Source: Vitrella brassicaformis CCMP3155
Taxonomy: Eukaryota > Protista > Chromerida
DNA length: 64,000 bases
Assembly (NCBI GenBank): GCA_001179505.1
Contig: CDMY01000404.1
Span: 1-64,000 of the forward strand
Direction: 5' to 3'
Shown piece by piece: positions 18,743-57,903 of this stretch. The notes beneath the pieces were generated by a model. That model saw only the letters and a program-made list of their open reading frames with translations. It was not told the origin of the DNA and did not search any database. The translations under genes were made by a program, and so were the position numbers. Numbering within the stretch: the stretch's first letter is position 1; each line of letters opens with the position of its first letter.

Positions 18743-21633
18743 ATGATCGGCGCCATGGATACAGCTCAGGTGGGTGGCGGACTGACGGGCAAGAGAAGCC
18801 AGCAGCTTCCATCCAACGGCTGTGGTGTCATGTTGTGTGTTGTGTGTTGTGTGTTGTGTTCAGTTGAAGAATCAGGCGGCGCGTGTGGAGCAGGCCCTGC
18901 AGGAATTAGTGCAGCTCCACTCGCAGGTATGCTGTGATGAACGCACCTGACAGGCCCAGCGCCACACCCTCTCGCTGTGTTTGTTGTTCCTCTCTGCATC
19001 AGGTTGGTGCTCATCTGTCGAAGATCAAGCAGCTGGACCCTGCCGAGGTACACACAGAGTCCGCACTGGGCAGCAGGTCACGGCACATTGTTTGGTGCCC
19101 TCCGGTGGTCTTGCAGGCATCGTCCCATGAGTCGCTGCTGGTGCCCACTCAGCTGTCCCTTCTGGAGTCTTATGTCAAAGCCGCCGTCACTCAGCTGTCG
19201 TCTGTCGAGTCGGGCCTTTCGGGAGCCGTCGATGCTCTGACGGCTGCCCCCACGCCGCCATCAGCCAATAGCTCGGCAGCTGCAGAGACCGACCAACAGC
19301 CACAGGTACACATCATCCATCCAAAAGAGTCAGAATAGAGCACTGTGTCCATTCCGTCGGATCTATTGGTCACAGGCGCGGCGGCCATCGTATCGTCTGG
19401 TCAAGGAGAGCGGCTGTCCACCCGAATTAGAAGAACCGGTGAGAATGACACCACGATAGACCTGATACATCAAACCCACCTTAACGTATTAATGCCTTCT
19501 CTCTTTGCCCTCAGGCCCGTCGCCCTCTGTCGTGTGATGAGCTCCTCAACGTGTCCGGCCACCTGCAGCCCTGGGAGCTGACGCGCTACCGCCGGCCCCT
19601 CGGCACGCGCCTCTTCACCCAGTCGGCCGCCAACTACGCCAACCTGGTCATCGACTGTGAGGACGACAAGGCCAGGCGTATGTGGGCGGCCATGCCGCTG
19701 GCCGTGGCGCAGAGGTGGGGGCAGAGGGCGACCAACATCAGAGAGATCAAGCACCGGCGCCCCGTGGGTCGAGAGAATTGGTGTCGCGGGACCTGGGTGG
19801 CGCTGGTAGAAGGCCACGCCAGCGGCCGAGCGGCCATCGCAGCCAAACAGAAGCGCAAGAGTGAGGGAGGGGAGGGGACAGCTGTTGCTGCTGCGGCACG
19901 GCAGGCTGACGGCAGCGGGCAGTCGGCTGATGACGGCACATTGGAGGTACTGTCATTCGAGGCCGTCAAACTCGATGACAGCATTCACATCCCCCACCCT
20001 CCTCCCTCATCTGACCTGCCCCCTGCCCCCACCTCCCGCATCCACCTGCCGGCACTCAAGACCGTCAACAACATCCCCAGCGATTGCATGTCTGCTCGCG
20101 TGGGCCGCCAGTGGCGCACCCCTGGCGTCACGACGCTCATCGTCGGGACCGGTTTGGATCTGTCATGGTATGACGAGGAGGAGATGGAGGGCCTGAAGGC
20201 GTGGGTTAGCGGCTGTGAGGCCATTGAGATGCTGGACCTCAAGCACATCTACTTCGGGACCGCGGCCGGTCTGCTGAGTGCGCTGCCCGCCAACGGCAAG
20301 TCGCTGGCGGCGCTGCACACACTGCGAGGTGTGTCTATGGATGAGGACGTGTGGGTGAATACTGACAGTAGCGGGATCGACAGGCTGCGTGAGGTGATGG
20401 TGGCGAGGGGCGCCAAGCGGTCCGTTCGCGAGGTCAAGATCACCGTGAGGGCCATGCATGATGACGACGATACTGTGGTGTGGTCGGGGAGCGCTGCCCG
20501 GCTCATGTAAGGATGCAGAAAGAGAGAGGGGTAATGACGGGCGGTGCAACACATTATTGTGCTTTGTCTTCTATCAGTGAGGCCGTTGCGGCTCCCGAGG
20601 TAGCCTGGGAGGAGGTCTTCGCACTGAACGACGACGGCACATCTGGACGCATTGACGCGGAGCTCCTCTCGCTCAGCCGCAGGACCGGTACTCCCGCTGC
20701 CCAGAAGCTCATCGGCGGCTTCGCGAAGACTGCCGGCACCGTGACTTACAGCGGGCGTCACGAAACCATCCCCGCCGCCATCAGGGACGACGCATTCGCT
20801 GCCGCCCACATCCTACGGCTGGCCGGTGGTGCACTCGCCAACAAGAAGCGCGCAGTCCAGGTCGCCTCCGGCATGCCCAGCCTGTCGCACATCGACGCAT
20901 CAGCGATCGCACCTGTTCGTGAGGTGTGGCAGTTCCTGGAGGGGTTGCAGACGGCGCGGGAGAGCAGGGGGTGGGCGGAGAGGAGCCTGTCGTCAGTGGG
21001 TCTCAGCCTATCGGCCCACACGCTCACCTTCACAGACCCCCACGACCGCGACCACCCCTGTCTGTGGCACCGTGACACCACGAAGCTGCCGCCGATCGAG
21101 GAAGTGCATGTTGACGTGAGGAGTAAGCAGGAACGATTAATAGGGGGTCGGCCATTCGGCGTGGCGTCTGTGTGTGTATGGTGCTTTGTTTCTTTGTTTG
21201 TTTGTTCGTTTGTTTCAGGCACGGTAGCGGATGACCAGTTCGAGGCATTCTACAGCAGCATGGTAGCCGCGGTGATCTCGTTCACCAGCAAGCTCAAGGT
21301 GCCCGACACAGACAGACAGATGGCTGCTGGGCAATCTGCTTTACGTCTCTCTGGTCGCGTCGCCAGGGCCACAAGAGGACTCAGATCAAGATGACTTTTG
21401 GGTCGCGTCGTCGCGTCGAGCAGCCTTTCCTGGCGCAGCTGGCCGGCGCCGGTCTCAAGGTCAGCATGCTCGTCGACACCCTGTCTGTCGAGCGCCGCAC
21501 ACCAGGTGAGAGACAGGCCTGCAGACCATCCCCAGCTGCATCCACTCAGACAGACAGCCAGCCTCTCCCACCGATCCCTACGCGCGCATCTCTCCCTGTC
21601 TCTCTGTTGCCTGTCTGTGCGTCAGATACGTGA
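18743..21633 (+). CDS. Family C (coiled-coil + F-box-like + 'EGH-GR' domain + LRR-like region) copy 1, about 9 exons, apparently intact
   Basis: MIGAMDTAQ|LKNQAARVEQALQELVQLHSQ|VGAHLSKIK...|ARRPLSCDELLNVSGHLQPWELTRYRRPLG...WCRGTWVALVEGHASGRAA...IDRLREVMVARGAKRSV...; exons join in frame with GT-AG introns; ends ...RRTP|DT*. Near-identical structure in the inverted copy 52035-54937. Confidence 0.8.
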
Positions 21634-21919
21634 GTCTGGTTGGCGTGCGGCCGATGTAGCTCGGTTGTCGGTAGACGATGGGTGGATGGAATACATGGGT
21701 AGAGCTCACTCAGACATGTGCGTGTGTGAGCGTGGGTGACGATTTTGGTTCCTTCCTGTCTGCTGCCCCCTCAGCCCCCCCTCCCTCCCTCCCTCCCTCT
21801 CTCTGTCCCTGACAGTCACACAGCCGGGTCACCGACGAAGGGCTGGGCAGACAGGCGAGAGAGGCAGCGGCAGGGATGAGCGAGCAGACGGCAAGACTCA
21901 GTCATGTGTGCAGCTGTTA

Positions 21920-22480
21920 GTGGAATGGATGACAGGCGGATGGACAGGATCGGTGGTGTGCGTGTTGGCGATGGACGGACACACGTGTGTCATTCCTGGA
22001 TGTGCGCGTGGATGTTTGCATGTTCGTTGAATGAATGCCTGTGGATTGACACCAACCACACACCCACACCCGCATTCACACGCGTGTGTCATTCGCTTCG
22101 TGCATCGTTGTGGGCTTCCCGCGACACCGTGCCGTGATGTCACACCGACATTGCTGACATGCAGCGGCGATGTTGCATCACGACGCAGTACGTGAGAAGC
22201 CCGCCCTTGAACACGCAGCAAGCACACACCTGTCTGTCTCTGGCTCTTCCATTCTCTCTCTCTTGGATGTTGGCCGGTCCTGGCTCGTTTGACACACGGC
22301 ACGCTGCCCAATGCAAAAACACCTGGGTCCAGGCATTCCTGCGAAGGGCACCGAACTCAAGATCAAACGAGCCAGAATCGACCTCCCACACCAACCGAAC
22401 GACGATACCAACAGAGGGGTAGATAGCACGACTGTTCAGACCCCACCACAGCAGCCATCCATCCATCCATCCGACATACA
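21920..22480. repeat. Orphan ~550-nt dispersed repeat, copy 1 (inverted partner ~47740-48310)
   Basis: Shared unique sequence, e.g. gccggtcctggctc.tttgacacacggcacgctgccca.tgcaaaaacacctgggtccaggcattcctgc and gataccaacagaggggtagatagcacgactgttcagacc. Confidence 0.85.
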
Positions 22481-22572
22481 CACACGGCCACTTAACGGCC
22501 CTCTCGCTCGCAAGACAACAACAGACGCACCTCACCCCGACCTGCCTTACAACAAAACAGCCCCCCTCCCAG

Positions 22573-24805
22573 CTACGCCCGGACCTTCCTCGACGGCCGC
22601 CTGGGCTGCTCGCTTGGCTTTGGCTGTGGCTGCCCGTCTGTCGTCGACACACTGGCGGGTGGTGGTGGTGCGGGGCCTGTTGGCGAGCCCGACAGCCACA
22701 GCACGATGCAGAACAGGCGACGCTTGCACATCTGCAACTGCCACCTGCAGGCAGGAAGACACGACATACGGCAAGCAATGGGTGTTGGGGCTGGTGTTGT
22801 GTGGCGGGTCTCACTCGTTCGCTTACTCACCATGTGGTGTCTGACCGCAACAGCACGAGGGTGTCTGTGTGGGGGTCGAGTACACGCTCGCTCTGCATCG
22901 CATCAGTCCACCCATCCCATACACACCAGAGAATGTGTTGAGGACGGACGTGTTGGTTTGTTGTGGTGTGTTGCAGAGCTCGGCTCACGTCAGGGTTTTC
23001 CTCCAGATGGTCGAGCAGCGTTGATATGTCACGGGCCGGCAGAGCGCCATCCTGCAGCCACTCACACAGGGAGAGAGAGAGAGAGAGCGAGAGTGCACCC
23101 AACACCCTCTCCCTCTTTCCCAGGCCTTACCGTGGTCTTGACGGCTTTGATGGCGCCCCCGTCTCTCTCAGTGTCCCACAGCAGGTCGCTCGAGAAGAAG
23201 TAGAGCAGCGTCAGCCGCCGCTCGTCATCGTGCTGCCGCATGGGACTCTTGGACGCGTTGTCCAGATGCCATGTGTACCGGTCGTCGTTGCCTGCATCCA
23301 CCACACAGACAGCAGCCAGGAATGGTGCGTGTGCTGTGCTCTCTGTGTCGTGCTCTTTTACCGTCGAAGCACCAGAGCTGTGGATCGGTGTGGCCGGTCA
23401 GCTGCAGACCTAGTGTGCTCTGACACAAGTGGATGGAGCAGGGAGCCACGCACAGGTGGGTGCGGTTGTGTGTCGATTTGTGTCTTTGCGTACGTTGGCC
23501 CGTTTGCACATCGACTTTGCGAAGGTGAGCACCAGCTCCAGCAGGTTGGCCAGCGCTCCAGTGGTGCTCACATCGCCGCTGTCGTGCTCCAGATGCTCGA
23601 ACAACCTCTGCAGCACATCAAGACACACACATCAACCACATCAACTCTCTCTTTCTGTGTGTACTATTGGGTCGATTGCCTCACCCCCTACTCACCTTTT
23701 GCGTGATCGAGTGGAGCTGCTTGACGACGGGATTGAGCATGGCGACAGGGTTACTAGAAGGCTTCTCAGGCCGGTCAAACACGCCACTCGCGAACACCGC
23801 CGACGCCTCGTGAAACCCTCGGTCACTCATCGACGACTCGGCACCGGCACGACACACAGCAATGCCATTCGACCTCAGAAGAGCCAACATCTGAACAAGC
23901 CACACACCGACACACGACCTCCTCCCTCCCTCCCTCCCTCCCTCCCTCTCTCCCTCTCGCGCGCGCGCTCTTGCTCTCTCTCTCTCGTTGTGTGTGGGTG
24001 GGGTCAGCTCCCACCAGACCTCATCTGTGAGAGAGTCAGGTGAGCCCTTGAGCATGTCCACATCCACAGGTGCGGGGAAGGGGGGCAGCGGGGTGCCGTT
24101 GGTGGCTGAGGCTGCAGCTGCAGCAGGGGGGTCGGGGTAGAGGGGACTCCATTGCGTGAATGCCTTCCGGGCCGCCCCGCGACGCTCCTCATGCTCTATC
24201 TCCTACACCACACGACATGACACACAAATAACGCGCATAGCCATTCACAGCAATTTTGCTCACGTTGAGCATTTGTTTGGCCGCGGCATTGGTTGCATCG
24301 ACCTCCAGCAGCGCCTGCAGGGTGACCTTGGCCTCCTCTGTGGCCCACGCGCCGCCGCCCTGGTCGCTCGGGAGCTTCCGGAGCGCCTCTGCCTTGCGGT
24401 AGAGGGCCTTGACGTTGGCCTGGTCCGACGCCAGCACCTTGTCGCAGTAAGCTGACAATCACACACAACCACACACACACAGAGAGGGGGAGATGGCAAC
24501 ACGTATATCACCCTGTTTGGTGTGTCTGCATGGCTGTGCTCACCGATAGCGTCCTTGTAAGCCTCCCTTTTGAGGTTGACAAGCGACATGTTGCCGTATA
24601 TCGACGAGCGGCACTCGGCAAGCTCCGCATCTTCCTCGTTGACACGCCCGCCCGGCCTGTCTGGCAAGAGATCTCTCAGCCTGTCCAGTGCTGCAGCCCA
24701 GACGGCGGCGGCCTCGTCGTAGCGGCCCTGCTTGAAGAGCCTGTTGCCCTCGTCCTTCATCTCACGTGGGTCGGGACCCGCGTCAAGATCCTCAAACTGA
24801 ACCAT
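22573..24805 (-). CDS. TPR-domain + PHD/EGLN-like 2OG-Fe(II) oxygenase fusion protein
   Basis: N-terminal TPRs (EMKDEGNRLFKQGRYDEAAAVW; IYGNMSLVNLKREAYKDAI|AYCDKVLASDQANVKALYRKAEAL). C-terminal prolyl-hydroxylase-like core: TDPQLWCFDGNDDRYTWHLDN (HxD at 23260-23268), RRLTLLYFFSSDLLWDTERDGGAI, LDPHTDTLVLLRSD, FCIVLW. Confidence 0.82.
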
Positions 24806-25138: not shown

Positions 25139-27816
25139 ATGGACCAATTCTACAAGGTGAATGACCCAGAAAGGACAAAAAACGAAATTGCGGGGTCGTG
25201 TGTGTGCTGCGAATGCATTGGATGACGTGTCGGTTTGGTCTGTGTGTCCTTTCAGACGAAGATGTGTCCGCACATTCTGCGGGTGAGAAGAAAACACGGC
25301 CACAACTCAGACAGCCAGACAGTCAGACAGATGGAGAGATCAGAGGAAGCGCGGCTATCAGCAATCAGACAGAGATGAGATGATGAATCGCACACACACA
25401 CACACACACGCATGGCTGGAGGAGAGAGAGGGACAGACGTCATATCAGTCACATAATCCTTTCCACTGAGTGTTTGTTCTGTTGGATGGCGTGTCGCATG
25501 TGTGTGTGTCTTTAGGGGAGTTGTGTGCGGGGTCAGTGGTGCACCTACGCCCACTCGCCGGCAGAGCTGAACCCCCTGCAGGACCTCAGGAAGACCAAAC
25601 TCTGCGAAGCTTGGCTGCACGTGAGCTGCCAGTGACTCACAATGAATGAATGAATGAATCGCTGGCCACCTCAACTGCACACGCATTATTCTGCTGATGG
25701 CTGTGGCTGGTATGGATGCCGTCTGTCTGTTTTGCTTCAGAGCGTGTGTCATGATCTCAACTGCAAATTTGCCCACGGGTGAGGAGATGGGATGGACGGG
25801 TAGACAGGCGGGGCGGGCAGGGAGGGCTATGTGTGTGATTGAGTGGTTGACGTGACGAATATATTGGATTGACCTGTCTGTCTGTCTGTCTGTCGTGCGT
25901 CACGTTCCACTCACTCCACCAGGGAGCAGGAATTGCGGTGCACCGATGACTACTACAAGACAGGTAGGTAAACAAAGGAGTGAAAACCCGTGTGTGTTTG
26001 CCTCGCTCCATCGCCATGTCATGTGCGTTCGTTGGTTCCTTTAATGCAGCGCTGTGCAAGTTTTGGAAGCAGGGCAGCTGCCCTTTCGGCCTGGCATGCC
26101 GACACGCACACGGCATTCAGGAAGTCAGGACACGCAAGTACGCACACACGCACACACACACACGCACACACACACACACACACACCGTGGCGTGCTTCAG
26201 GTATCGGCTGACGGAGGGTCAGAAGAAGGAGCTGGCCGTCAAGAAGAAGCAGAAGGAGTACGACCGGCGGAACCACATGCGGGCCAACAAAAAGATGATG
26301 ATGATGACCATGATGAATAATGGAGCCGCCAACAACGCAGCCGACACAGCCGACGCCGCAACCACCGCACCACCAGCAGCACCGCCAGACACCATCAATG
26401 TCACCAACGGCACATTCACACCGTCGCCGCCTCCCCCGCCCCCACCACCTCCCCCAATCAGCCCCCACACACAGACGCAGTCGCCATCGTCCCGAGAAGA
26501 CAGCACGACGGCTCCGCTGCCCCTCCCGGCCTCGTGTGTGATGGAGGACGTGGGTCAGTGGCCGGGGTCGGCCCACGACACGCCGATGAGCGCGCACTCG
26601 CTGCCGATATGGCAAGGCAGGTGCCGCATCATGTCGGACGAGAGTCAGCGGGCGCTGCAGATGGCGAGGGAGGCGAGATCTATGAGTGACGGCGCCGTGG
26701 CTGGCCCAGTGCAAGGGCAAGAGCAAGAGCAATTGCAGCAGGGAATGGGAGGGGGAGAGGCTGAGGGTCATGGCCAGCATCCCGTTTCTTCGTCTTCGTT
26801 ATTATTGTCTCGATGGCGGTCGCTGTCTTTTGAAGGAGGCGCTTCAGGCCCCATCAGCAAGGGGCCGCCGTCTGCGTCAGGCGCCATCTCGCCCCACATG
26901 CACTCCCCCGTCCCCTCCCTCCCATTTGCCAGCCGGAAGCTCTCCAGCATGAGCCACGCCAGCACCAACTACACCAGCTACACCGACTCGACCAACACCA
27001 CCCTGCTCACCTACGGCGGGGGCCGCTCGCGCGTCAACTCGGCCGCCACACACACTGCTGCTGCCCTGCCGCCATTACCCAGCCCACCACACCTGAGAGC
27101 GGGCTCGGGCGGTCCGCAGCTCTTTATGGATGCCTTGGGGGCTGCTTCGAGCGGCCGGGGACCACCCAGAGCAGACACAGCGCCTGCAATGGTCCCAGTG
27201 GCTGGGCTGAGGGCACACAAGCGGGGCCACCGCGCCCGGGCGTTCATGCAGCATCACCGGAATCGGGCGGAGACCGATGGCGTGATGGTCGAGGACTCGC
27301 CGGCGCGGTCCGCCGGCAGGCACCACCCCATGATGCCGATGGACTCCTCGCCCGTGTCATCGGGCGACGGCGGCCAGCTCAGCTCGCGGCCGTCATCCCC
27401 CTCTCCCCCACCCTTCCCCCTCGCCCCATTCCACTCGCCCGACCACCAGAGTGTGTCGCTGCGTGTAAGCCTGGCGCACCCCTTCACGAGCCCGTTCTCT
27501 GCTCCCAGCACGCCGGGTCGTTCGTCGGTGCAGGGTGGGGGTATTGGTGGTGGCGGCGGTGGTGTTGGTGGGATGGATGTGGGTCGTCAGTTCTCTGGAT
27601 CGTCGATGCTGACCTCGTTTGGAACGCCGTCGCCGTCGAGCGCCGCGCAGGCGAGCTTGCTGCAGGTCGTGGGAGTCGGAAAGCCATACACCATCACTGC
27701 TGAAGGTGAGACGAACACATAAGGGAGAGAGGGAGAGATTGATGCGATGCATTCTCGTGTTCTCTTTATGTCGATCAGTCTTGGCTGAGGCGCAGCCTGA
27801 CCGCTATGAGGAGTGA
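25139..27816 (+). CDS. Triple CCCH zinc-finger RNA-binding protein with long low-complexity C-terminus
   Basis: Spliced: MDQFYK|TKMCPHILR|GSCVRGQWCTYAH..LRKTKLCEAWLH|SVCHDLNCKFAHG|EQELRCTDDYYKT|ALCKFWKQGSCPFGLACRHAH. These are three C-x7-C-x4/5-C-x3-H fingers, each with a (Y/R)KT.LC lead-in. 3' end approximate. Confidence 0.9.
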
Positions 27817-27946
27817 GTGACTGGCGCATTCTGGCGGGCGGCAAGAGGGCCCAAGCAGCTGACATGGGGTGGGTGGTGTGACAAGTAAAGCCAGGATAGA
27901 GATCGGGATGGATGACGGGGTCAGGGGAGGGGGGGGGGGGGGGGGT

Positions 27947-28246
27947 NNNNNNNNNNNNNNNNNNNNNNNNNNNNNNNNNNNNNNNNNNNNNNNNNNNNNN
28001 NNNNNNNNNNNNNNNNNNNNNNNNNNNNNNNNNNNNNNNNNNNNNNNNNNNNNNNNNNNNNNNNNNNNNNNNNNNNNNNNNNNNNNNNNNNNNNNNNNNN
28101 NNNNNNNNNNNNNNNNNNNNNNNNNNNNNNNNNNNNNNNNNNNNNNNNNNNNNNNNNNNNNNNNNNNNNNNNNNNNNNNNNNNNNNNNNNNNNNNNNNNN
28201 NNNNNNNNNNNNNNNNNNNNNNNNNNNNNNNNNNNNNNNNNNNNNN
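27947..28246. other. Assembly gap (300 N) flanked by poly-G
   Basis: Run of N with G homopolymers on both sides. Confidence 0.99.
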
Positions 28247-28249
28247 GGG

Positions 28250-31801: not shown

Positions 31802-31834
<33 letters not shown>

Positions 31835-33200
31835 TGTATGTGTTGTGTGCGTGACGAAGTGCAGTGAGCCACCTGGTCTGAGACGTCCACATATTCATCT
31901 GGGCTGCCTGCCATCCATCCATCCACACACACACACACATACGCATCAACCATCACACACAAACGACGTTTGTGTACTTCCATCATGCATTCCGTCATCT
32001 TACCTACCTACCTCAATAATTATATTTCGTTTCCTTCCTATGAAGGCCTCTCTCTATGCGAGCCCCTTTCTGCGTTTGCACGTGAGTGACTCTTCCCNNN
32101 NNNNNNNNNNNNNNNNNNNNNNNNNNNNNNNNNNNNNNNNNNNNNNNNNNNNNNNNNNNNNNNNNNNNNNNNNNNNNNNNNNNNNNNNNNNNNNNNNNNN
32201 NNNNNNNNNNNNNNNNNNNNNNNNNNNNNNNNNNNNNNNNNNNNNNNNNNNNNNNNNNNNNNNNNNNNNNNNNNNNNNNNNNNNNNNNNNNNNNNNNNNN
32301 NNNNNNNNNNNNNNNNNNNNNNNNNNNNNNNNNNNNNNNNNNNNNNNNNNNNNNNNNNNNNNNNNNNNNNNNNNNNNNNNNNNNNNNNNNNNNNNNNCCC
32401 CCTCTCTCTCTCTGTTTGCCGTGGCCGTCCACTCCTGCCCGCCTCCCTGACCTGTCCGCCCCGTCCGGCTGTGCGCCTGTCAAGTGAAGTGTGCCCGCCT
32501 CTCTCCCTTGGACCGATGTCTCTCTCGTGCCGTGCTGGCAAATGGGGGTGTTTGTTTGTCGGTATGCATGTGTGTGTGTGTGTGTGTGTGCCGAGAAAGG
32601 AGGAGAGAGGGTCGCGTCGCGTGTCCGTCTGTCCGTCTGTCAGTCGTGGGGTGTCGTCATGGTATGGTTGATTCGTTGGTTGATTTCTATCGAGCGCCAG
32701 CCGGCTGGCCGGCCTGTGTGTGCGTGCTGTCTGGCTCGTGGAGGATGGACGCAGCCAGAGAGGCATGCAGCAAGATCCGGCGGAGTTGGTCTCGAGGACA
32801 GCGTACACACATCAACTCTCGTATCTTTGTGTGTAGCTGGAGACATTGACAGATGTCCAGATGGGATGCATTGTGGAATTTAGTCGATGGTCGACAGACA
32901 GACAGACAGACAGACAGACGAGCGGGGAATGGTTGCTGCTGCTGCTGCTGCTGTGTATATGTGCTGTGGTCTGCGTGTCCTGTGGATGGATGGATGGATG
33001 GACCTGTCTGCCTGCCCGCCTGTTTGTCTGTCTCGGTTTATCCCTCTCTCTCTCTGCCTCTCTGCGCACGAATGTGCCTGACTGCCCCCCTGACTGACCT
33101 GACTGTCGTGTGGTTGATTGGATCCATATGCACGCCAACCAGAGTTTCACTGCCCTTTGGTCTCAACGACTCACACATCATCACTAAAGGCCTTCAATGC
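28250..33200. repeat. Gene-poor spacer dense in simple repeats: (CA)n, (GACA)n, (GGAT)n, (GTG)n, (CTGA)n, (GA)n
   Basis: No spliceable ORF with protein-like content; ORF-track hits translate microsatellites (CVCV, THTH, RQTD). Confidence 0.7.
32098..32397. other. Assembly gap (300 N)
   Basis: Run of N. Confidence 0.99.
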
Positions 33201-33315
33201 GTAGTGTCAAGGTATCACTAGCAAGGCAAGCACCGAAATCCTTCTCTCTCCTCTCCTCCACGACGTCACAAAAAATGCGCCCCACACGTCCCTCCTCATA
33301 TAAATCCCCGGCTGC

Positions 33316-46267: not shown

Positions 46268-47530
46268 ATGGAAACTCTCATCGCTTCACTCGCCTTCATC
46301 AGCCTCTTGATGACGGCTTCCGGCTGGCTGACGGCTGCTTATCAGCGCTTCTCGACGTTCCCACTGGACAAGAGGAAGTGTGCGCGACCGCAGTGCTGCC
46401 CTGCCAAAGGTCCTCCGCTGCATTTGCATCATGCGACTGCGCACTGCGTGCTGATGGGCCTTGAGGACGCCTCATGGAGGGCAGATGCGGCTTCGCGGCG
46501 AAGCGCCATTGCAGCTGCGGCGGTGCCTGCAACGGTCCTTGTGCCTCTCACGGCTCTATTGCCAGCCTCTGCTGATGAGTCGGAGGCGAGAGAGGATGCA
46601 CCAGCGTCTCCGGACGCCGTCTTTCTCAACGAGACCACACCAAAGTAGGCCAACAAGCGGAAGATACACCAAACAAGACATCCGTCGATTGTTCTATACT
46701 TCCATTGTTGTCGCATCAGGATCACAGCTCGTTGTTGGTTGGAGATTGCCGAGGCGCCGAAGACAGCTGATGGCGCTCCCCTTCTCCTGGGCCGCCTCAA
46801 CATCTCGGTTTATGGCGAGATTGTGCCCAAGACGGCAGACAACTTTATCCAGCTGTGCAGCTCGGGCAGTTACCAAAACAGCACTATCTACCGGATCGTA
46901 AAGGACTATGCCCTGCAGATGGGCGACATCGGTGCGGCCGGCACGGGCAAGAGCGGCCGCAGCGCACAGCCCGACGGCTCACCGCTGCCAAAGGAAAACA
47001 CGCGCATCCGCCACTCGGTGCCGGGCCATGGTGTGGTGAGCATGGTGCGCGACCTCAAGACCAAGAAGGTCGACAGCCGCTTCTTCATCACTCTCGTGGA
47101 CGACGCCGGATGGGCCGACTCGCGCTTCGTGGCGTTCGGAAGGGTGCAAGGAGGAGAAGGGTTGATGGAGCAGCTTGGGAAAGAGAAGGTGGAGCCAGTG
47201 ACCAACAGGCCGGTGCGCAAGCTCATCATCGCTGACTCGGGCGTGTACGGCCCCGATGAGCCCTTGCCCGTATCCCCGCCGCCATCAGCACAGTCCATTG
47301 TTAGCGCCAAGCCACGGCCGCTGCTGCCGACCGTCACCTCCCCAGCCGAGCCAAGGAAGGGTCTGTTTGATGGACTGCTGCCGTCGTTGGGTGGTGGAGA
47401 GGGCGGGGGGGAGATTCAGTCGACCGATTCTGCTGACAGGGAGGCAGATCGTGTGCGACGGGCCAGAGAGGCGCAGGAAGAGATCAGACTGCGGAAGAAG
47501 AGACAGACAGAAAGGGAAAGCGGCGAGTGA
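46268..47530 (+). CDS. Cyclophilin-type PPIase, plastid thylakoid-lumen targeted, degenerate active site
   Basis: One intron 46645-46719. Cyclophilin core GRLNISVYGEIVPKTADNFIQLC..STIYRIVKDYALQMGD..GVVSM..SRFFITL..WAD.RFVAFGRV. Leader = signal peptide + transit peptide + SRR..hydrophobic..ASA|DE. Confidence 0.9.
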
Positions 47531-49183: not shown

Positions 49184-51444
49184 CTATCCCTCCGCTCGGC
49201 CGTCTGCGCCTCCATTCCCCTCCACAGGTCCCTCCCCCTCTCCCTCGCTATCGTCGTCGTCCACGTCGGTGTCGAGATCGGCCATCCCATCGCTGTCGTC
49301 ATCCTCGCCCTGCTGGCCTTGCTGGCGGGCGGCCCGAGCGGCCTCGTAGCGAGCCGTGTCGACACGGCCGGGGAAGTAGTCCAATAGTATATTCATTGCC
49401 TGATTTACGTCAATCAACACATAACATAACAACAAGCAGGCACTTTGTTGTCGGTGTCTCTTCTTGCTTCTGCATCTGCATCCCTACCTCAAACGCGACG
49501 TCCTGGTCGTCGTGTGTCTGCAGCGCCACCAACATGCTAACGTCAGCCTGCGTGTGCAAACAGACATGACCACAGGGGGAGGGCCCACCATCACACTGTG
49601 CGCCTGTCTGTCGCTATGTCAGTCACCTCTCGAATGAGCTGGCTGAAGGGGTTGTTGGGAAGGCTCTCGGCTACCTGCCTGTCCCTGCCATGACTGAAGA
49701 CACATACACACACTCATATACACACACTCGTGGTGCTCCTGTGGAGTGGTCTGCTTACTCGAGTATGTTGCTGAGCACCACGAGGACGTTGGGGTCATCC
49801 GTGCTGTCCAGGAGGCCGCAGAGGCGCTGGACACACCCATACCCGACCAAACCTTCGACCTGAACACATGGACGGGTCAGGGCAGAAGAAGAATTGCGAT
49901 CCGTTCTCCCATTCCCCCGCTACCTACCTGTTGCTGCGATGCGTTGTTTGCCAGGAGGGCCATGGCCTCTGCTGCAGCCTGCTTGAGGTGCCGCAGCCCA
50001 CCCGAGACGATGAAGTTGATGTCGATGGTCAGGCCGCTGTCGGCGTACATGTTGTCCGCCGTCATGATGTCGAGGAGGTGCGGCACTGCTCCACTATTGA
50101 CGACCGCCTCGACATGGCCAGCCGTCCCTTCATTCACAGACACACGGGTGACGTTTGCAATCAGGGACGATTGCTGGTATGCATTCGTTCGTACCCTCAC
50201 TGATCATGATCGTGAGAACACGACAGGCCTTGTCGTGCGCTCGCGCGAGACGAATCGCTCGCTCGCATCCGGCATCCTCCTCAGACATGTCAGACATGGA
50301 TGCGGGCATCTGCGGTTGCATGATCTCGTTGGTCGCCGGTGGCTGCAGCAGCTGGCTGAGCCGCGGGATGACACCACACTCAGCCAGCACGTCACGATGG
50401 GCATCGGTACCTGCATCAACACACAACCAAGAGTTGACTGACAAACAGCGCCACCTCTCCGCGTCAGGGCAACTGACCTTGTGCAATGTTGTCTAGCACA
50501 GTTAATGCGTTCTCTAGCATTCCACACATAACCCACTCCCCCGCCGCCAGCTCCACCAGCCGCTCACACACCCCGGTCGCCACCACGGCATCGCGATGCT
50601 CATCATCGTCCCTGCCGTCACTGATGGCCGCCAGCGCCGACATGGCTCCATACAGGAGGCAGCCCTCTTGGTCGGGCGTGTGGGTGCAGATGATGTTGGC
50701 CAAGACGGGCACGAAGGGCCCGATCTTGTCGAATGCGGGTGGGTCGGGGTTCCAGAAGCACAGGTAATACAGCAGGTCTGCACCGCCCTTGAGCACCTCG
50801 AAGGCCGTCCTCTCGCGCATCGTCGTCTGCAGTCGTGCGAGGACGCCCAGCTGCAGCATGTCGCCGCGCTCCTGGCCCAGGAGTGTTGGTCTGGCGAGAT
50901 TGACCAGTGTCTTCATGGCCGCCACACACACGCCGTCATCGAGTGACGACACCAGCTCCACGAGGGGCGGGACGGCACCGGCGTCGATGACGGCCTGCAT
51001 CTCTGGCCCGACGCTAGGTGTAGGCGGGCCGTTTGTATTGCCGGATGCGATGTTGTCCAGTGCGGATGCCGCCTGTTGCTGATGGTCGGGGAGGTGGTCG
51101 TCGCCCAGCCGCTCCACCAGCATCGGCAGGATGCCTGCATCGATGGCCTTCTGGGTGATGCACGGCACATGCCTGAGGGAAACCAGCTGGACGAGTGGCC
51201 GCAGCAGCTGCGAAGTGCTGTCGGGAGTTGTGGCGATGCTGGTGGAGATCTGGGTCATGACGGCAGAGATCTCGGCCTCCACGGCTTGAAGACCTCGTTC
51301 GGCCACCATCTGGTTGTAGCCCTCCTCCGTGCCGATGGAATCCAGCAACGCCGACGCCGACGCGTTGACCAATGCGCCCTGGGGCGACTCGGACAGAGGG
51401 CGCTGCTCAGCCGGGTGCTGCGTCGTGGTCTCCACCGACTCCAT
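49184..51444 (-). CDS. Importin-alpha-like armadillo-repeat protein lacking the IBB domain
   Basis: AIDAGILPMLVERL..QQQAASALDNIASGN..QAVIDAGAVPPLVELVSS..RDAVVATGVCERLVEL..EAVVNSGAVPHLLDIM..VEGLVGYGCVQRLCGLL..NPFSQLIRE..LQTHDDQDVAFE|AMNILLDYF follows the importin-alpha ARM1-10 order. Acidic C-terminal tail; no basic IBB at the N-terminus. Confidence 0.85.
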
Positions 51445-51899
51445 TTCTACTCTTGCGATGGTACGCGGAAGCCGCTCAAGGAAAAGAAAAAACGCAAAAT
51501 CGCTGGGAAAATCGGCGCCGTTCTGCTGGCCAAGATCGGATTGGCTAGGAGTGTCCGGGTTGTTTGTATGTCTGCTGTAGCCGACATTCACACGTGCACA
51601 CGTCGTATCTGGATAAACAGCTGACATGTGCGTGCATGCTGACGGACCGACTGACTGACGGACGGACGGACTGTCCTAACCTCACCGGCCCACTACACAC
51701 TGCATCTCTCGTAAGAACCAACCTCTCTCTCCGTGCGTGCAGTAATGAATGCAGCCAGTATAAGTCTGACATCATGCCCCACACGGCAGCTGGCTGGCGT
51801 TCGCGTCTGGCGCTCATTGCACGCTCAACACAGGTATGTGCAATGGATGGATGGCTGGATGGATGGGTGCGTGACGATCTGGTCATCATCGTCACGAAT

Positions 51900-54800
51900 T
51901 GAACAAGTGGGTCCTGCAGGGATACACACCCATGTCTGTGTGAGCTCTACCCATGTATTCCATCCATGTATTGTCCATCCATCCATCCATTGTCTGCCGC
52001 CAGCCGAGCTACATCAGCCGCACGCCGACCAGACTCACGTGTCTGAAACACACGACAGGCAACAGAGAGACAGGGAGGCGACGCGCGTTTATTGAGTGGG
52101 TGCAGCTGGGGATGGTCTGCCCGTCTCTCACCCGGTGTGCCGCGCTCGACAGACAGGGTGCTGACGAGCATGCTGACCTTGCACAGACCGGTGCCGACCA
52201 GCTGCGCCAGGAAAGGCTGCTCAACGCGACGAGGCGACCCGAAAGTCATCTTGATCTGAGTCCTCTTGTGGCCCTGGCGACGCGACCAGAGAGACGTAAA
52301 GCAGATTGCCCAGTGGCCATCTGTCTGTCTGTCTGTCTGTCTGTCTGTGTAAGGGATGTTTGGCGTGTGTCGGGCACCTTGAGCTTGTCGCTGAATGAGG
52401 TCACAGCGGTCATCATGCTGCTGTAGAATGCCTCGAACTGGTCATCCGCTACCGTGTCTGAAACAAACGAACAGACAGACAGACAGACAGACAGAAGCAC
52501 CATACACACAGACGCCACGCCGAATAGCTCTCCCACTTATTTCCGTTTCCCCCTCCTTACTCTTCACGTCAACATGCACTTCCTCGATCGGCGGCAGCTT
52601 CGTGGTGTCACGGTGCCACAGACAGGGGTGGTCGCGGTGCTGGGGGTCCGTGAAGGTGAGTGCGTCGGCCGATAGGCTGACACACACTGACGACAGGCTC
52701 CTCTCTCCCCGCCCCCTGCTCTCCCACGCCGTCTGCAGCCGCTCCAGGTACTGCCACACCTCACGAACAGGTGCAATCGCTGATGCGTCGATGTGCGACA
52801 GGCTGGGCATGCCGGAGGCGACCTCCACTGCGCGCGTCTTCTTGGCGAGTGCACCACCGACCAGCCGTAGGGTGTGGGCGGCGGCGAATGCGTCGTCCGT
52901 GATGGCCGCGGGGATGCTCTCGTCACGCCCGCTGTAAGTCACAGTGCCGGCAGTCTTAACGAAGCCGCCGATGAGCTTCTGGGCAGCGGGAGTGCCGGTG
53001 CTGCGGCTGGGCGCAATCTGGCTGAGCGAGAGGAGCTCCGCGTCAATGCGTCCAGATGTGCCGTCGTCGTTGAGCGCGAAGACCTCCTCCCAGACTACCT
53101 CGGGAGCCGCAACGGCCTCACTGATAGTACACGAAGCACAATCATGTGCTGCCCCCTCTCTCTTTCTGCATCCTTACATGAGCCGGGCAGCGCTTCCTGA
53201 CCACGTCACAGCACCGTTAAGACTCGGCATACACCTCACGGTGATCTTGACCTCGCAAACGGACCGCTTGGCGCCTCTCGCCACCATCACGTCACGCAGC
53301 ATGTCGATCCCGCTCCCGTTGGTATCCACCCGCACGACCTCATGCATAGACACACCTCGCAGTGTGCGCAGCGCCGCCAGCGACTTGCCGTCGGCGGGCA
53401 GCGCGCTCAGCAGACCGGCCGCGCTTGCGAAGTAGATGTTCTTGAGGTCAAGCACCTCAATGGCCTCACAGCCGCCAACCCACACATTCAGGCCCTTCCA
53501 CTCCTTCAGGCCATACGATGACTGACCCAAATCGGTCCCGACGCTGAGCGTCGTGACGGCAGGGGTGCGCCACTGGCGGTCTGCGCGAGCCGAGATGCAC
53601 TCGAGGGGGATGTTGTTGACGGTCTTGAGTGCCGGCAGGTGGATGGGGGAGGTGGGGGCGGGGGGCAGGTCAGATGAGGGGAGAGGGTCGGGGAAGAGAT
53701 TGCTTTCGTAGGGCCAGACGGCCTCGAATGACAGCACCTCCAATGTGCCGTCGTCAGCCGACTGCCCGCAGCCGTCAGCTTGCCGTGCCGCAGCTGCCGC
53801 AGCTGTCCCCTCCCTCTCGCGCTTCTGTTTGGCTGCCATGGCCGCTCGGCCGCTGGCGTGGCCTTCTACCAGCGCCACCCACGTCCCGCGACACCAAGCC
53901 TCTCGACCCACGGGGCGCCGGCGCTTGATCTCTCTGATGTTAGTCGCCCTCTTCCCCCACCTCTGCGCCACGGCCAGTGGCATGGCCGCCCACATGGGCC
54001 TCGCCGTGTCGTCCTCACAGTCGATGACCAGCTTGGCGTAGCTGGCGGCCGACTGGGTGAAGAGGCGCCTGCCGAGGGGCCGGCGGTAGCGCGTCAGCTC
54101 CCAGGGCTGCAGGTGGCCGAACACGTTGAAGAGATCATCACACGACAGACGGCGACGGGCCTGAGGGCAAAGAGAGAAGGCATTCATACGTTAAGGTGGG
54201 TTTGATGTATCAGGTCTATCGTGGTGTCATTCTCACCGGTTCTTCTAATTCGGGTGGACAGCCGCTCTCCTTGACCAGACGATACGATGGCCGCCGCGCC
54301 TGTGACCAACACATGCGGCGGAATGGACACAGTGCTCTATTCTGACTCTTTTGGGTGGATGATGTGCACCTGTGGCTGTTGGTCGGTCTCTGCAGCTGCC
54401 GAGCTATTGGCTGGTGGCGGCGTGGCGGCGGCCGTCAGAGCATCCACGGCTCCCGAGAGGCCCGACTCGACAGACGACAGCTGAGTGACGGCGGCTTTGA
54501 CATAAGACTCCAGAAGGGACAGCTGAGTGGGCACCAGCAGCGACTCATGGGACGATGCCTGCAAGACCACCGAAGGGCACCAAACAATGTGCCGTGACCT
54601 GCTGCCTGGTGCGGACTCTGCGTGTACCTCGGCAGGGTGATTGGCAGGGTCCAGCCGCTTGATCTTCGACAGATGAGCACCAACCTGATGCAGAGAGGAA
54701 CAACAAACACAGCGAGAGGGTGTGGCGCTGGGCCTGTCAGGTGCGTTCATCACAGCATACCTCCGAGTGAAGCTGCCGCAGCTGGTCCAGGCCTTGCTCC

Positions 54801-55490
54801 ACACGCGCCGCCTGATCCTTCAACTGAACACAACACACAACACACAACATGACACCACAGCCGTTGGATGGAAGCTGCTGGCTTCTCTTGCCCGTCAGTC
54901 CGCCACCCACCTGAGCTGTATCCATGGCGCCGATCATATGCCGCTATCAACGGTCCGCATGAACGGCGAACAAGCCTGCACCATCCCATGCAGCCACAAA
55001 ACCAACCAGATCAGGCGGCGGAAAGCATTGTGAAAGGGCCGTTCCTCGGTCTGAATTCTCATTTCTGTGCTCGACGTATGTCGCCCTCTGCCTGGGAGCC
55101 CTCGAGTAGCCCTCCCGCGCCACTCACCTGGTTAGTGCCACGCCTGGAATCGCTCCGGAGTCTGGCGATGAAAAGCCAGCCACAGGTGACCCCAAACAGC
55201 AAAGGCGGCAGCAATCACGCCTCTGCAATGAGTCTATTCCGTCAAATTGATGAGCGCTGATTTATAGGGTTTTCTGGGGTTTCAGGGTATGAACTACCCC
55301 ACCACCAGATCGCAGGCCCCCACACGAAAGGCACTAAGCAAACAAAGGCTGATTTGCTTCCTTGAGTTAGATCGGTAGGTCGCCTGCCTCCCACAAGCAA
55401 AGCAATTCATTCACACACATCATTCACAGCGGCTGTGACACTGTGTTTTAGCGTCCTTCCTTGTCTGTGTGCAGGTCTGAGTCACTGTCG
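51900..55490. repeat. Segmental duplication, arm 2 (inverted partner 18240-21720)
   Basis: See arm 1. Confidence 0.92.
52035..54937 (-). CDS. Family C copy 2, apparently intact
   Basis: Same exon structure as 18743-21633; ARRRLSCDDLFNVFGHLQPWELTRYRRPLGRRLF..WCRGTWVALVEGHASGRAA; ends ...RGTP|DT*. Confidence 0.8.
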
Positions 55491-55723
55491 TGTCGATGAG
55501 CTGAAAAGAATCGTCGCGTTTGTCCTTCCTGAGGTGCGCCAGGCAGAGTGAAGGAAAAGGCCAATTCGCATGGCCCATCGGCGCCGCCCTCATGTGCTGT
55601 GTGTTTGTGCGCACACAGGGAGGACCCTGAGCATCGCTTATTAGCTGCGGCTTCAGAGAAGGCATCGAAGACTTCTCATCGCACCGGACGACAGAGACCA
55701 GCCGCTGAATCAGATCTACAGCT
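54938..55723. promoter_or_regulatory. Putative bidirectional promoter between family C copy 2 (-) and family A copy 2 (+)
   Basis: Divergent ATGs; 54938-55490 is homologous to 18241-18742. Confidence 0.55.
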
Positions 55724-57903
55724 ATGGAGGGGGGCGGTAGACAGGTGAGGCGCATCACAGCACTTTTTGCCATGAACAGCTCAGGTCACCGAACGGGTGT
55801 TTGCTGTGTGTGGTCGGGGCGTGGGTGCAGCGCAAGAGGACCCGTCACAGTGAGGACGCGCCGGCTGCGGCTTCGTCTTCGTCTGCTGGTGGTGGTGTTG
55901 AGAGTGACGAGGAGCGCCAGCGACGGGAGGAGAGGGAGCGAAACCTTCGGCAACAAATCACTGACACGGTGAGCCAGCCACCGACGCACTGAGGGCATAC
56001 ACACTGATGGATATCCTCTGCCGTCCCATCTGCTGTGTTGCTGTACTTCAGGAGGGCCTTCTCAGCTACATGATGGCCTTCCTTCCCGTCAACCTTATGG
56101 TGCAGCTGGCCAAGTCCATCTGGCAGCACGCCGCGCCCGACCTCTCAGACGTCACCATCAGCTCGGCAACCAGGGAGGAGCGGTCGTTTTGGCAGCACGT
56201 CCATCTCGCCTTCGTCACCCAGCTGGCCGCCCGACTCACCCGACTCACAACCATCACCCTCCGGTACCCTGACGGGTTCCGCCTCTGGTGTTTCGACGTC
56301 TTTGTGGCCATCATCGAGGGCCACACTGCCGGCCGACGGGCAGCCAACCTCACCGGAGGGACACTGCACATCATCGCTGTCAAAAGAGGCGTTCGGCTGA
56401 TCGGCACGGCGAGGCAGACGGTCGCGAGGACTCACCCATCCCTCCCAGCCCCTCTCGACCCGCCCCCGACCCTCCACGCACTCACCACCATTGCCGGCCT
56501 GCGAGACGACCATGAGGAGCTGGCCGAGCGGGGCTGGCTGGTGCCATCACTCGCCGTCGTGCGGCAGGAGGGGTGGGACGCCGACAGATTGAGCCAACTC
56601 ATCAGCTCGTCCCGCTCCCTGTGGTGTGTGGACGGGACGTTTGTCGGTGAGGAGTGGGCGGATGTGTTTGAGGACATCCCTGCGACACCGGCTGGGCAGC
56701 AAGGAGGGCCACTCGCACAGCTTGAGGAAATCGGCACTATCCTGGTCGAAGGCGACGATCTGGCCGGCCTCAACCGGCTTCAGGTGACCACAAAGGGCAG
56801 GACGGCAGGGCCCGTGGATTGGCTCATGATGTCCTTCCTGTATGTGTGTTCTTGCCTTCAGGAAGCGCTCGTTGCGCGTGGTTGTCGACGGTCACTCAAG
56901 CAGCTGCACGTGGAGTTTGGTGCCGCACGCATCGACCGCCACACACTCCCCTCGCTGCTGGCCCTGGATCGGCTCGTCGGCACGTGCTGGCGACTGGACG
57001 CCGAACTCATACTTGAAGTCACCACCACCAGCCGTTTCGACTTCGACCTCTCCATGTTCTACGACACCGACTTTCCCACCCGCCCCTCACCCTCACTCAA
57101 GACCATGCTCCAGCAGCTGGCACGGCAGGCCCAGTGGGTGAAGTACATCCTCTCTCAGCAGGACCTCATCGACAACCTCGGCAGCCCCAGCCAATCGGCC
57201 ATCGACATCGTATCCAGCCTCTCATTCCGTCAGGCCTATGCGGTGGCAGCTGGCTATGCCCCTGGCTTCGACCCCCCGGCCAACACCCCCTCGCCCCACC
57301 CCGCCATCATCACCCACATGCAGCCGTTGCCGAAATTCTCAGAGGTGCTCACGTTCCTGTGTGTCCAGAGCAAATTGCGTGGTGCTGCCGCCCGGCTATT
57401 CGCCACCAAGATGCCAAGGAAGATCGAGAGGGTGGTCATCGGATACCTGTCGAGTGGTGAGGAGAAGGTGGGCGTGTTAACGGCTTTGGGGAGTGAGAGA
57501 GAGGTGGGTACGGTGGAAATGAGGCAGGTAGACGTCGACCAGCTGGTTGGGGCGGCCGATGGATTGCCGACGATCAGAGAACTGGAATTCACCCTGACAC
57601 GTACGCCGAGAGGGAGATGAGGGCATTAGTGTCCGTCCTCATTGCTGCCTTGTGTGTGTTCCCTCCCCTTCAGTGCCCAATGGTGTGGAGGATGCCGGCA
57701 GCTTCGTCCGCACCCGCCTCTCGTCTGTGATCTCGCACATCAGGGGCCTCCGGCGTGTGAGGCTGGAGGTCGCCGCCACGACAGCTGATCAGCGTGCTTC
57801 CGTCGAGACCTCCGTCGCTGTGGGCACCAACATCGACGGCTTCATTATTACACGCATATTCAACAACACTTGGCTGACAATAACTGCAGTTCGCAATGCC
57901 TGA
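55724..57903 (+). CDS. Family A copy 2, apparently intact (5 exons)
   Basis: Exons 55724-55744, 55831-55968, 56052-56783, 56862-57600 and 57674-57903 join in frame (MEGGGRQ|RKRTRH..QITDT|EGLLSYMMAFLP..RLQ|EALVARG..TL|PNGVEDAG..VRNA*). Confidence 0.85.

What the first reader, a model, noticed from the sequence alone, without database searches (positions are those of the whole stretch)
19515..57903. Families A and C share one unnamed domain: F-box-like start, a 'WC....A..EGH..GR.A' core and an 'RL.E..VARG..RS' block
Seen: family A LSDVTISSATREERSFWQHVHLAFVTQLAARLTRLTTITLRYPDGFRLWCFDVFVAIIEGHTAGRRAA aligns without gaps to family C YANLVIDCEDDKARRMWAAMPLAVAQRWGQRATNIREIKHRRPVGRENWCRGTWVALVEGHASGRAA. 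Colinear blocks continue: GGTLHII/DGTLEVL, LPAPLDPPPTLHALTTI/LPPAPTSRIHLPALKTV, RGWLVP/RQWRTP, RLQEALVARGCRRSLK/RLREVMVARGAKRSVR. The four loci have no DNA-level similarity between families and different intron positions, so the split is old. Just upstream each has a segment resembling a divergent F-box helix pair (LLSYMMAFLPVNLMVQL; LSCDELLNVSGHLQPWELTRYRR). Inference: a large lineage-specific superfamily, possibly SCF-type substrate adaptors with an LRR-like solenoid. The invariant W-C-E-G-H-G-R could be a ligand or metal site. I do not recognise a named domain for it.
Basis: partly seen in the sequence, partly recalled or inferred. Interest (0 to 1): 0.75.

Follow-up and report, generated by a model that had tools for sequence, protein, structure and literature searches.

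The report
Vitrella-only F-box-like leucine-rich-repeat gene family
The four genes belong to one very large, fast-diversifying family, so far seen only in the alga Vitrella brassicaformis, of proteins predicted to fold like the F-box/leucine-rich-repeat receptors that choose targets for ubiquitin tagging; standard domain databases do not recognise them.

Summary
All quoted peptides are in the window. Separately built profiles of families A and C match at hhalign E 9.7e-21 over 307 columns, with no DNA similarity and with different intron positions.

The shared stretch is not a new fold. AlphaFold models of A2 (pLDDT 89) and C2 (pLDDT 85) show three short N-terminal helices followed by an irregular leucine-rich-repeat (LRR) solenoid. 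Their best structural matches are TIR1, COI1, D3, Skp2 and FBXL2/3/5/17, and several of those alignments begin at about the partner's first modelled residues, where its F-box should lie.

Pfam finds no F-box or LRR above threshold in 103 members scanned. A profile search of 1.84 billion proteins finds only 201 clusters; all 26 named proteins among 30 sampled are Vitrella brassicaformis.

Three annotated members carry an N-terminal SKP1-like domain. Among A-type paralogs, alternate (presumably exposed) strand positions are hypervariable. WC..EGH..GR is 76-93% conserved, not invariant, and does not look like a metal site.

Best reading (0.65): very divergent SCF substrate receptors. SKP1 binding is untested. 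The assembly gaps lie outside all four genes. This scan has already noted F-box/LRR families and a Skp1 fusion elsewhere in this genome.

The parts
1..2017 (+). Locus A1: an A-type family gene, cut off at the contig/window start, with a reading-frame break near 338-341.
   Evidence: Profile matches at 3-341, 341-775, 825-1568 and 1625-1870. 79% nt identity to A2 over 2.1 kb. One base fewer than A2 in the GGTLQ/ITID stretch.
255..305 (+). A1 signature helix WCFDVFVAIIEGHIAGR.
   Evidence: Motif search.
19497..21355 (+). Locus C1: a C-type family gene. First large exon 19497-20507, later exons about 20555-21355.
   Evidence: Profile match 19497-20504 at 315 bits, plus 20555-21133. tblastn with P0032 and P0031. 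The ATG that C2 has at the equivalent position is absent here, and an in-frame stop lies 3 codons before the equivalent codon.
19527..19628 (+). C1 F-box-like segment LSCDELLNVSGHLQPWELTRYRRPLGTRLFTQSA.
   Evidence: It aligns with the C2 segment that was modelled as three short helices.
19779..19829 (+). C1 signature helix WCRGTWVALVEGHASGR.
20382..20429 (+). C1 block RLREVMVARGAKRSVR (a helix-to-strand turn of a middle repeat).
52285..54208 (-). Locus C2: a C-type family gene. First large exon is ORF 53177-54187; later exons 52285-53077.
   Evidence: Inverted duplicate of C1, 87% nt identity over 3.1 kb (18698-21725 against 54982-51924).
54047..54154 (-). C2 F-box-like segment RRLSCDDLFNVFGHLQPWELTRYRRPLGRRLFTQSA.
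   Evidence: AlphaFold helices at residues 16-23, 28-32 and 35-48. Structural alignments to Skp2 and FBXL2/3/5/17 start at model residues 7-11.
53846..53896 (-). C2 signature helix WCRGTWVALVEGHASGR; it opens a long 33-residue helix.
53255..53302 (-). C2 block MLRDVMVARGAKRSVC.
55816..58040 (+). Locus A2, the gene for public protein P0001 (615 aa). Exons 55816-55968, 56052-56783, 56862-57599, 57670-57867 and 57963-58040.
   Evidence: tblastn of P0001. GT..AG introns at 55969-56051 and 56784-56861. Profile match of 746 bits.
56052..56135 (+). A2 F-box-like segment EGLLSYMMAFLPVNLMVQLAKSIWQHAA.
   Evidence: AlphaFold helices at residues 56-61, 66-69 and 74-83. It is the only place in the full-length family profile where the canonical F-box profile aligns.
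56286..56336 (+). A2 signature helix WCFDVFVAIIEGHTAGR (P0001 residues 132-148; helix 134-150).
56862..56900 (+). A2 block EALVARGCRRSLK; its RLQ lies before the intron at 56775-56783.

Best explanation
Families A and C are two branches of one very large gene family of the chromerid alga Vitrella brassicaformis. The family has at least about 150 genomic loci and 201 protein clusters at 50% identity.

The proteins are highly divergent F-box-like/leucine-rich-repeat proteins of the FBXL type.
- Head: about 35 residues forming three short helices with an F-box-like pattern (hLxxhhxFLPxxLhxxL...W).
- Constant base: the head sits on the first repeats of the solenoid, which carry the family signature ERxFW, RYP and the WC-x8-EGH-xx-GR helix.
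- Body: this continues into roughly 17 irregular beta-strand/helix repeats.

Proposed mechanism. The constant head docks on SKP1/cullin, or on a SKP1-like domain fused in cis in a few members. The concave beta-sheet of the later repeats is hypervariable between paralogs and would bind different target proteins, which are then ubiquitinated.

Shown here: A-C homology, the predicted LRR fold, family size, restriction to Vitrella among the hits that carry names, SKP1-like fusions in annotated gene models, and the pattern of variability.

Inferred: that the head is a working F-box, that it binds SKP1, and that the proteins act in ubiquitin ligation.
For: Homology between A and C: hhalign E 9.7e-21 over 307 columns; BLASTP E 5e-10.

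Predicted fold:
- P0001 (A2): pLDDT 89.3, pTM 0.83, with N-terminal helices followed by about 17 strand/helix repeats.
- C2 first exon: pLDDT 85.4, pTM 0.84.
- Foldseek puts F-box/LRR proteins first for both models: TIR1 at E 3.9e-8, then D3, COI1 and MAX2; TIR1, FBXL2-SKP1, D3 and COI1.

Other indications of an F-box head:
- Protein-language-model features give F-box clusters at 0.95, and all ten best named hits share that family or clan.
- UniRef names member P0018 'F-box domain-containing protein'.
- Pfam F-box-like gives a weak hit (17.3 bits) immediately upstream of the family domain at contig C33.
- Profile-profile comparison with this genome's canonical F-boxes aligns in the expected register, P 9.7e-5.

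Link to the SCF ligase:
- Three annotated members start with a Skp1_POZ domain: P0096 at 45.7 bits, P0174 at 28.4 bits (both above the 21.9 cut-off), and P0110 at 19.6 bits. The F-box-like/LRR domain follows in each.
- At four loci the SKP1-like exons lie within 1 kb upstream on the same strand, and two paralogous loci keep the same exon order across short gaps.
- SKP1 and cullin genes are present in the genome.

Repertoire character:
- Among 21 A-type paralogs, strand positions alternate between 0-0.6 bits and 2.2-3.4 bits of entropy, and strands (1.31) vary more than helices (0.92).
- dN/dS is 0.37-0.64 in parts of the conserved front and 0.76-2.0 further on.

The genes look real. About 93% of genomic matches are open across the head domain. 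A spliced transcript contig matches the genome at 99%.
Against: No Pfam F-box or LRR model reaches threshold in any of 103 members scanned. The single LRR-type match is one member at E 0.054.

Against the full-length family profile, the canonical F-box profile scores only P 0.045, probability 1.2%.

The canonical F-box genes of this genome are not members of the family.

The structures are predictions. The SKP1 fusions rest on annotated multi-exon gene models, and their SKP1-like parts appear to lack the last F-box-binding helices (only positions 1-27 of 48 of the Skp1 C-terminal model match).

C1/C2 overall dN/dS is 1.02, which also fits relaxed constraint.
Confidence: 0.65

Rival explanations
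1. These are lineage-specific LRR recognition or scaffold proteins whose N-terminal helices are only a cap of the solenoid. They bind partners through the variable concave face but have nothing to do with SKP1 or ubiquitin ligation.
For: No Pfam F-box match in 103 members. Marginal profile-profile score. RanGAP and ribonuclease inhibitor, which have no F-box, score as well as Skp2.
Against: Both models rank F-box/LRR proteins first in Foldseek. Alignments to six different FBXL-type proteins begin near the start of the listed chains. SKP1-like domains are fused to three divergent members. Language-model features point to F-box clusters.
Confidence: 0.2
2. This is a largely decaying, neutrally drifting repeat family (a gene graveyard, or copies spread by a mobile element) with little present function.
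For: C1/C2 dN/dS is 1.02. A1 has a frame break. C1 lacks the ATG that C2 has. About 7% of head-domain matches carry stops. Copies are arranged in tandem and inverted pairs.
Against: Signature residues are kept at 83-94% across 112 domains. About 93% of head domains are open. Variability is concentrated on alternate strand positions while the positions between them stay invariant, which neutral decay does not produce. Spliced transcripts exist. Ordinary genes lie between the copies: a CCCH zinc finger, a cyclophilin and an armadillo-repeat gene.
Confidence: 0.1
3. This is the reader's idea: the WC..EGH..GR core is a new ligand- or metal-binding domain that defines the family's function.
For: It is the best-conserved stretch of the family (E 93%, W 91%, G 88%, H 87%, R 86%). 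In C it sits at the start of an unusually long helix.
Against: There is only one Cys and one His, missing in 17% and 13% of domains. Whole members lack the GH..GR part. The SKP1-fused P0174 has HVEGRKK instead and lacks the WC. The motif lies on a helix of an LRR repeat, not in a separate domain.
Confidence: 0.05

Closest known systems
FBXL-type F-box/LRR substrate receptors of SCF ubiquitin ligases (Skp2, FBXL2, FBXL3, FBXL5, FBXL17, KDM2A/B)
   Different: No Pfam F-box or LRR match above threshold. The repeats are irregular, about 23-40 residues. The family has its own signature (ERxFW, RYP, WC-x8-EGH-xx-GR) that, to my knowledge, FBXL proteins lack. It has hundreds of copies in one species. 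SKP1 binding is untested.
Plant hormone-receptor F-box/LRR proteins TIR1, COI1 and D3/MAX2
   Same: These are the best Foldseek matches for both models: TIR1 at E 3.9e-8 (A2 model) and 1.5e-4 (C2 model). Length and repeat number are similar (about 570-620 residues, 17-18 repeats).
   Different: Sequence identity is only 8-15% and TM-scores are 0.20-0.39. There is no evidence of a small-molecule pocket. The profile search against solved-structure sequences gives TIR1 only E 2.7.
Lineage-specific expansions of F-box genes in plants and nematodes (from my own knowledge, not tested here)
   Same: Hundreds of fast-evolving paralogs in clusters, with a constant ligase-docking head and a variable target-binding part.
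   Different: Those families are recognised by standard F-box models; this one is not. No such family is mentioned in the Vitrella genome paper, which has no occurrence of 'F-box', 'LRR' or 'ubiquitin' (PMC4501334).
Single-chain cullin adaptors such as BTB-domain substrate receptors (from my own knowledge)
   Same: The three SKP1-like::F-box-like/LRR fusions (P0096, P0110, P0174) put a POZ-fold cullin-docking domain and a target-binding domain into one polypeptide.
   Different: Here the POZ domain is of the SKP1 type and the F-box-like segment is retained. The fusions rest on annotated gene models.

Membership tests
F-box (Pfam PF00646 / PF12937) | Sequence match to the family profile above its threshold | tested here: not met
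   No F-box hit in 49 members at E<=10 or in 54 further members at E<=0.1. One genomic sub-threshold hit (17.3 bits) lies just upstream of a family domain at contig C33. hhalign against nine canonical Vitrella F-boxes gives P 9.7e-5 for the head alone and P 0.045 for full length.
F-box (Pfam PF00646 / PF12937) | A three-helix motif of about 40-50 residues at the N-terminal end of the target-binding domain | tested here: met
   AlphaFold helices at residues 56-61, 66-69 and 74-83 in A2 and at 16-23, 28-32 and 35-48 in C2. Alignments to Skp2, FBXL2/3/5/17 and KDM2A begin at model residues 7-14 and near the start of the listed chains. These are predictions only.
F-box (Pfam PF00646 / PF12937) | Binds SKP1 | not testable with these tools
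   No complex prediction or experiment is available. The indirect evidence is three members fused to SKP1-like domains and the presence of SKP1 and cullin genes.
Leucine-rich repeat, RNI-like | Tandem beta-strand/helix units forming a curved solenoid | tested here: met
Leucine-rich repeat, RNI-like | Match to an LRR sequence profile | tested here: not met
   There is one match to an LRR model among 103 members, at E 0.054, and nothing above threshold. The repeats are irregular.
Leucine-rich repeat, RNI-like | Strand positions alternate between conserved (buried) and variable (exposed) | tested here: met
   Entropy alternates between 0-0.6 and 2.2-3.4 bits along the strands among 21 A-type paralogs.
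   The motif has one Cys (83%) and one His (87%). Some members lack the whole GH..GR part.
PIP-box-tailed F-box/LRR family noted earlier in this genome | C-terminal Qxx[ILMV]xx[FYW][FYW] motif | tested here: not met
   None of the 180 retrieved members has the motif in its last 40 residues.

The most novel reading that the evidence does not exclude
Vitrella has built a private repertoire of some 200 ubiquitin-ligase receptors. Each has a constant docking head, which includes a new conserved helix (WC-x8-EGH-xx-GR) taking over part of the canonical F-box contact. Each also has a hypervariable LRR face. The repertoire would work as an intracellular surveillance system against foreign proteins from viruses, bacteria or other cells on the coral. 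In a few members SKP1 itself has been fused in, making single-chain cullin adaptors.
Probability: 0.15. Interest if true: 0.8.

Novelty: new variant of a known kind. Interest (0 to 1): 0.5.

Why it matters
If the reading is right, roughly 1% of the genes of a free-living relative of the malaria and Toxoplasma parasites encode ubiquitin-ligase receptors that domain databases do not see. Counts of F-box proteins in this lineage would then be badly underestimated.

The family offers a ready-made profile (alignment A1) for annotating about 200 'uncharacterized' proteins. It also offers a natural set of SKP1::receptor fusions for studying how SCF modules assemble, and a test case for repertoire-style diversification of LRR surfaces outside animals and plants.

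If the reading is wrong, it remains a very large orphan LRR family with a sharply conserved signature whose role is unknown.

Tried and rejected
- Pfam scans of exon ORFs and of 103 public members gave nothing above threshold for the shared region.
- A profile search against the sequences of solved structures gave nothing significant; TIR1 scored E 2.7.
- The word-indexed protein search run with the alignment saturated on A-type words and added little. The exhaustive profile search was then used, because the lineage-specificity claim rests on the absence of relatives.
- The canonical F-box genes of this genome were checked for membership and are not members.
- The metal-site idea was rejected on conservation counts.
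- A PIP-box tail, as in a family noted earlier in this genome, is absent.
- An exact-sequence look-up of P0174's contig returned nothing; the genome search was used instead.
- A search of earlier findings by sequence was blank.
Searches used single exon ORFs by reference and the public protein P0001 for A2.


Full report
**Source and layout**

The window is contig C404, bases 1-64000, of a 72,700,666-bp assembly in 1064 scaffolds. Those are exactly the figures published for Vitrella brassicaformis CCMP3155 (PMC4501334). Every named protein hit also carries that organism's name.

A profile built from the family finds four loci in the window and no others:
- A1 at 3-1870 (+)
- C1 at 19497-21133 (+)
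- C2 at 54178-52511 (-)
- A2 at 55831-57897 (+)

The two assembly gaps inside the finding's span (27947-28246 and 32098-32397) lie between unrelated genes, more than 6 kb from any family exon, so their continuity does not affect the finding. Ordinary genes lie between the family loci: a CCCH zinc finger, a cyclophilin and an armadillo-repeat gene.

**The observation**

All quoted peptides are present. RLQEALVARGCRRSLK needs the removal of a 78-nt in-frame GT..AG intron at 56784-56861.

The A-C similarity is well beyond chance:
- A2 against C2: 79 ungapped residues, 29% identity, E 5e-10.
- A2 against C1: extends over 324 residues.

There is no nucleotide similarity between A and C genes. A1/A2 are 79% identical over 2.1 kb, and C1/C2 are an 87% inverted duplicate over 3.1 kb.

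**What the shared stretch is**

Pfam finds nothing in it, and a profile search against the sequences of solved structures finds nothing significant.

Predicted structure gives a clear answer:
- With a 49-sequence alignment, P0001 (the public protein of A2, 615 aa) folds at pLDDT 89.3 and pTM 0.83. It has three short helices (residues 56-83) followed by about 17 strand/helix repeats.
- The first exon of C2 folds at pLDDT 85.4 and pTM 0.84 with the same plan.
- Foldseek ranks F-box/LRR proteins first for both models: TIR1, D3/MAX2, COI1 and FBXL2-SKP1.
- The FBXL alignments start at model residues 7-14 and at chain residues 105, 319, 9, 35, 205 and 889. From my own knowledge, this is about where each partner's F-box starts; I did not check it here.

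So the 'unnamed domain' is an F-box-like head plus the first eight or so repeats of an RNI-like LRR solenoid. The WC..EGH..GR motif is the helix of an early repeat (P0001 helix 134-150), and RL.E..VARG..RS is a helix-to-strand turn of a middle repeat.

**Is the head an F-box?**

By sequence the evidence is weak:
- 0 of 103 members hit the Pfam F-box models.
- A profile of nine canonical F-boxes from this genome aligns to the head in the expected register, at P 9.7e-5 when only the head is offered.
- Against the full-length profile the same comparison gives only P 0.045, although the head is the single place it aligns.
- The canonical F-box genes of the genome are not members of this family.

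Other evidence points towards an F-box:
- Language-model features put the C2 exon next to F-box clusters at 0.95, with all ten best named hits agreeing. The tool describes this as a lead, not proof.
- UniRef labels one member (P0018) an F-box protein.
- Three annotated members from different contigs begin with a SKP1-type POZ domain. P0096 scores 45.7 bits and P0174 28.4 bits, both above the cut-off of 21.9; P0110 scores 19.6 bits. Each continues into the F-box-like/LRR domain.
- At the four loci examined, the SKP1-like exons lie less than 1 kb upstream on the same strand. Two paralogous loci keep the same exon order, with gaps of about 45-85 bp between exons at one of them.

A fusion of two proteins that are normally partners is a classical hint of interaction. 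SKP1 and cullin genes exist in the genome.

**Size and range of the family**

- The head of A2 finds at least 151 places in the genome, from 271 candidates, and about 93% of them are open across the head.
- A C-type transcript finds 35 or more C-type copies, many in tandem clusters.
- The exhaustive profile search of 1.84 billion representative proteins finds only 201 at E<=1e-3 and 128 at E<=1e-30, with no tail of ordinary LRR proteins.
- Of 30 hits sampled, 26 are named Vitrella brassicaformis. The other four are unnamed transcript or metagenome pieces.
- One JGI contig matches the genome at 99% and is spliced, so C-type genes are expressed.
- One ENA metagenome contig is at best 81% identical in DNA. 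It therefore comes either from a relative outside this strain or from a copy missing from the assembly.
- The 51 weakest hits were not listed, so distant relatives in other organisms are not excluded.
- The genome paper does not mention F-box, LRR or ubiquitin, and I found no paper describing the family.

**How it probably works**

The signature residues are strongly but not strictly conserved over 112 domains: W132 91%, C133 83%, E142 93%, G143 88%, H144 87%, G147 76%, R148 86%, W100 92% and P126 94%. With one Cys and one His, and with members that lack the whole GH..GR part, a metal site is unlikely. A structural role or a docking role next to the head is more plausible, but I could not examine contacts because model coordinates are not exposed.

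Among 21 A-type paralogs, strand positions alternate between invariant (0-0.6 bits) and hypervariable (2.2-3.4 bits). The effect is strongest from residue 245 onward, and strands are on average more variable than helices (1.31 against 0.92). I read the invariant positions as buried and the variable ones as exposed on the concave face, which is the pattern of a diversified binding surface.

Pairwise dN/dS is 0.37-0.64 in parts of the conserved front and 0.76-2.0 further on. The counts are small, A1 carries a frame break, and these numbers also fit relaxed constraint.

Together this supports a constant ligase-docking head with a variable target-binding face. I put this reading at 0.65. The rivals are a non-SCF LRR family (0.2), a mostly decaying family (0.1) and the metal or ligand domain (0.05).

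**Relation to earlier notes of this scan**

The scan has already described divergent F-box/LRR families in other windows of this genome (s1-197158, s1-201670, s1-212182), as well as the Skp1 fusion (s1-235847). None of my 180 members ends in the PIP box reported for one of those families. I did not test whether those families fall within the same superfamily.

**Limits**

- The fold evidence does not by itself separate an F-box from a helical cap, because Rna1p, which has no F-box, scores highest.
Only exon ORFs by reference and the public protein P0001 were used.

Noticed in passing
window 300-360: A1 changes reading frame inside the GGTLQ/ITID stretch and is one base shorter than A2 there. 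This is either a broken copy or an assembly error. A1 is also cut off by the start of the contig.
   Followed up: partly
window 19470-19500 versus 54185-54187: C2's first large exon opens with ATG (MNAFSLCPQARR...). C1 reads INAFSLCPQARR at the same place, with an in-frame stop 3 codons before the equivalent codon, so C1 either uses an upstream exon or has lost its start.
   Followed up: partly
window 18698-21725 and 51924-54982: C1 and C2 are a 3.1-kb inverted duplicate at 87% identity that extends about 0.8 kb upstream of the coding exons. C2 and A2 sit head to head about 1.6 kb apart.
   Followed up: partly
G000 C552:39164-42429 (L041), C225:120372-123132 (L040), C648:5375-7582 (L035), C808 (L036): At four loci, SKP1-like POZ exons lie directly upstream of an F-box-like/LRR domain of this family. 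Three of them are annotated as single proteins (P0096, P0110, P0174). The SKP1-like parts seem to lack the last helices of SKP1.
   Followed up: partly
proteins P0100, P0107, P0117, P0123: A sub-branch of the family carries a C-terminal TLDc domain (Pfam PF07534, best E 1.4e-6; named TLDc by UniRef).
   Followed up: no
proteins P0076, P0077, P0046 and one member of alignment A4: Other heads or tails appear in annotated models: MORN repeats (P0076), a UniRef 'START' label without any Pfam hit (P0077), a ketoacyl-synthase extension (P0046) and a Rad51 match. Some of these may be merged gene models.
   Followed up: no
L039 (ENA ERZ893784, contig k147_3622084): A metagenome contig has an intact 587-aa A-type ORF that is at best 81% identical in DNA to any copy in this genome. 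This hints at a Vitrella relative in the environment, or at a copy missing from the assembly.
   Followed up: partly
L038 (JGI 3300017148): This transcript contig is 99% identical to contig C389 for its first exon, but its second exon matches contig C246 best (96%). It is either a chimeric assembly of paralogs or reflects a strain difference.
   Followed up: no
window 55816-55968 (A2 exon 1): A-type proteins share a charged helix (SDEERQRR.ERE, modelled as helix 33-52) ahead of the F-box-like segment. C-type proteins lack it.
   Followed up: no
window 25980-27719, 46739-47527, 50467-51627: Ordinary genes lie between the family loci: a CCCH zinc-finger ORF, a cyclophilin and an armadillo-repeat ORF.
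   Followed up: partly
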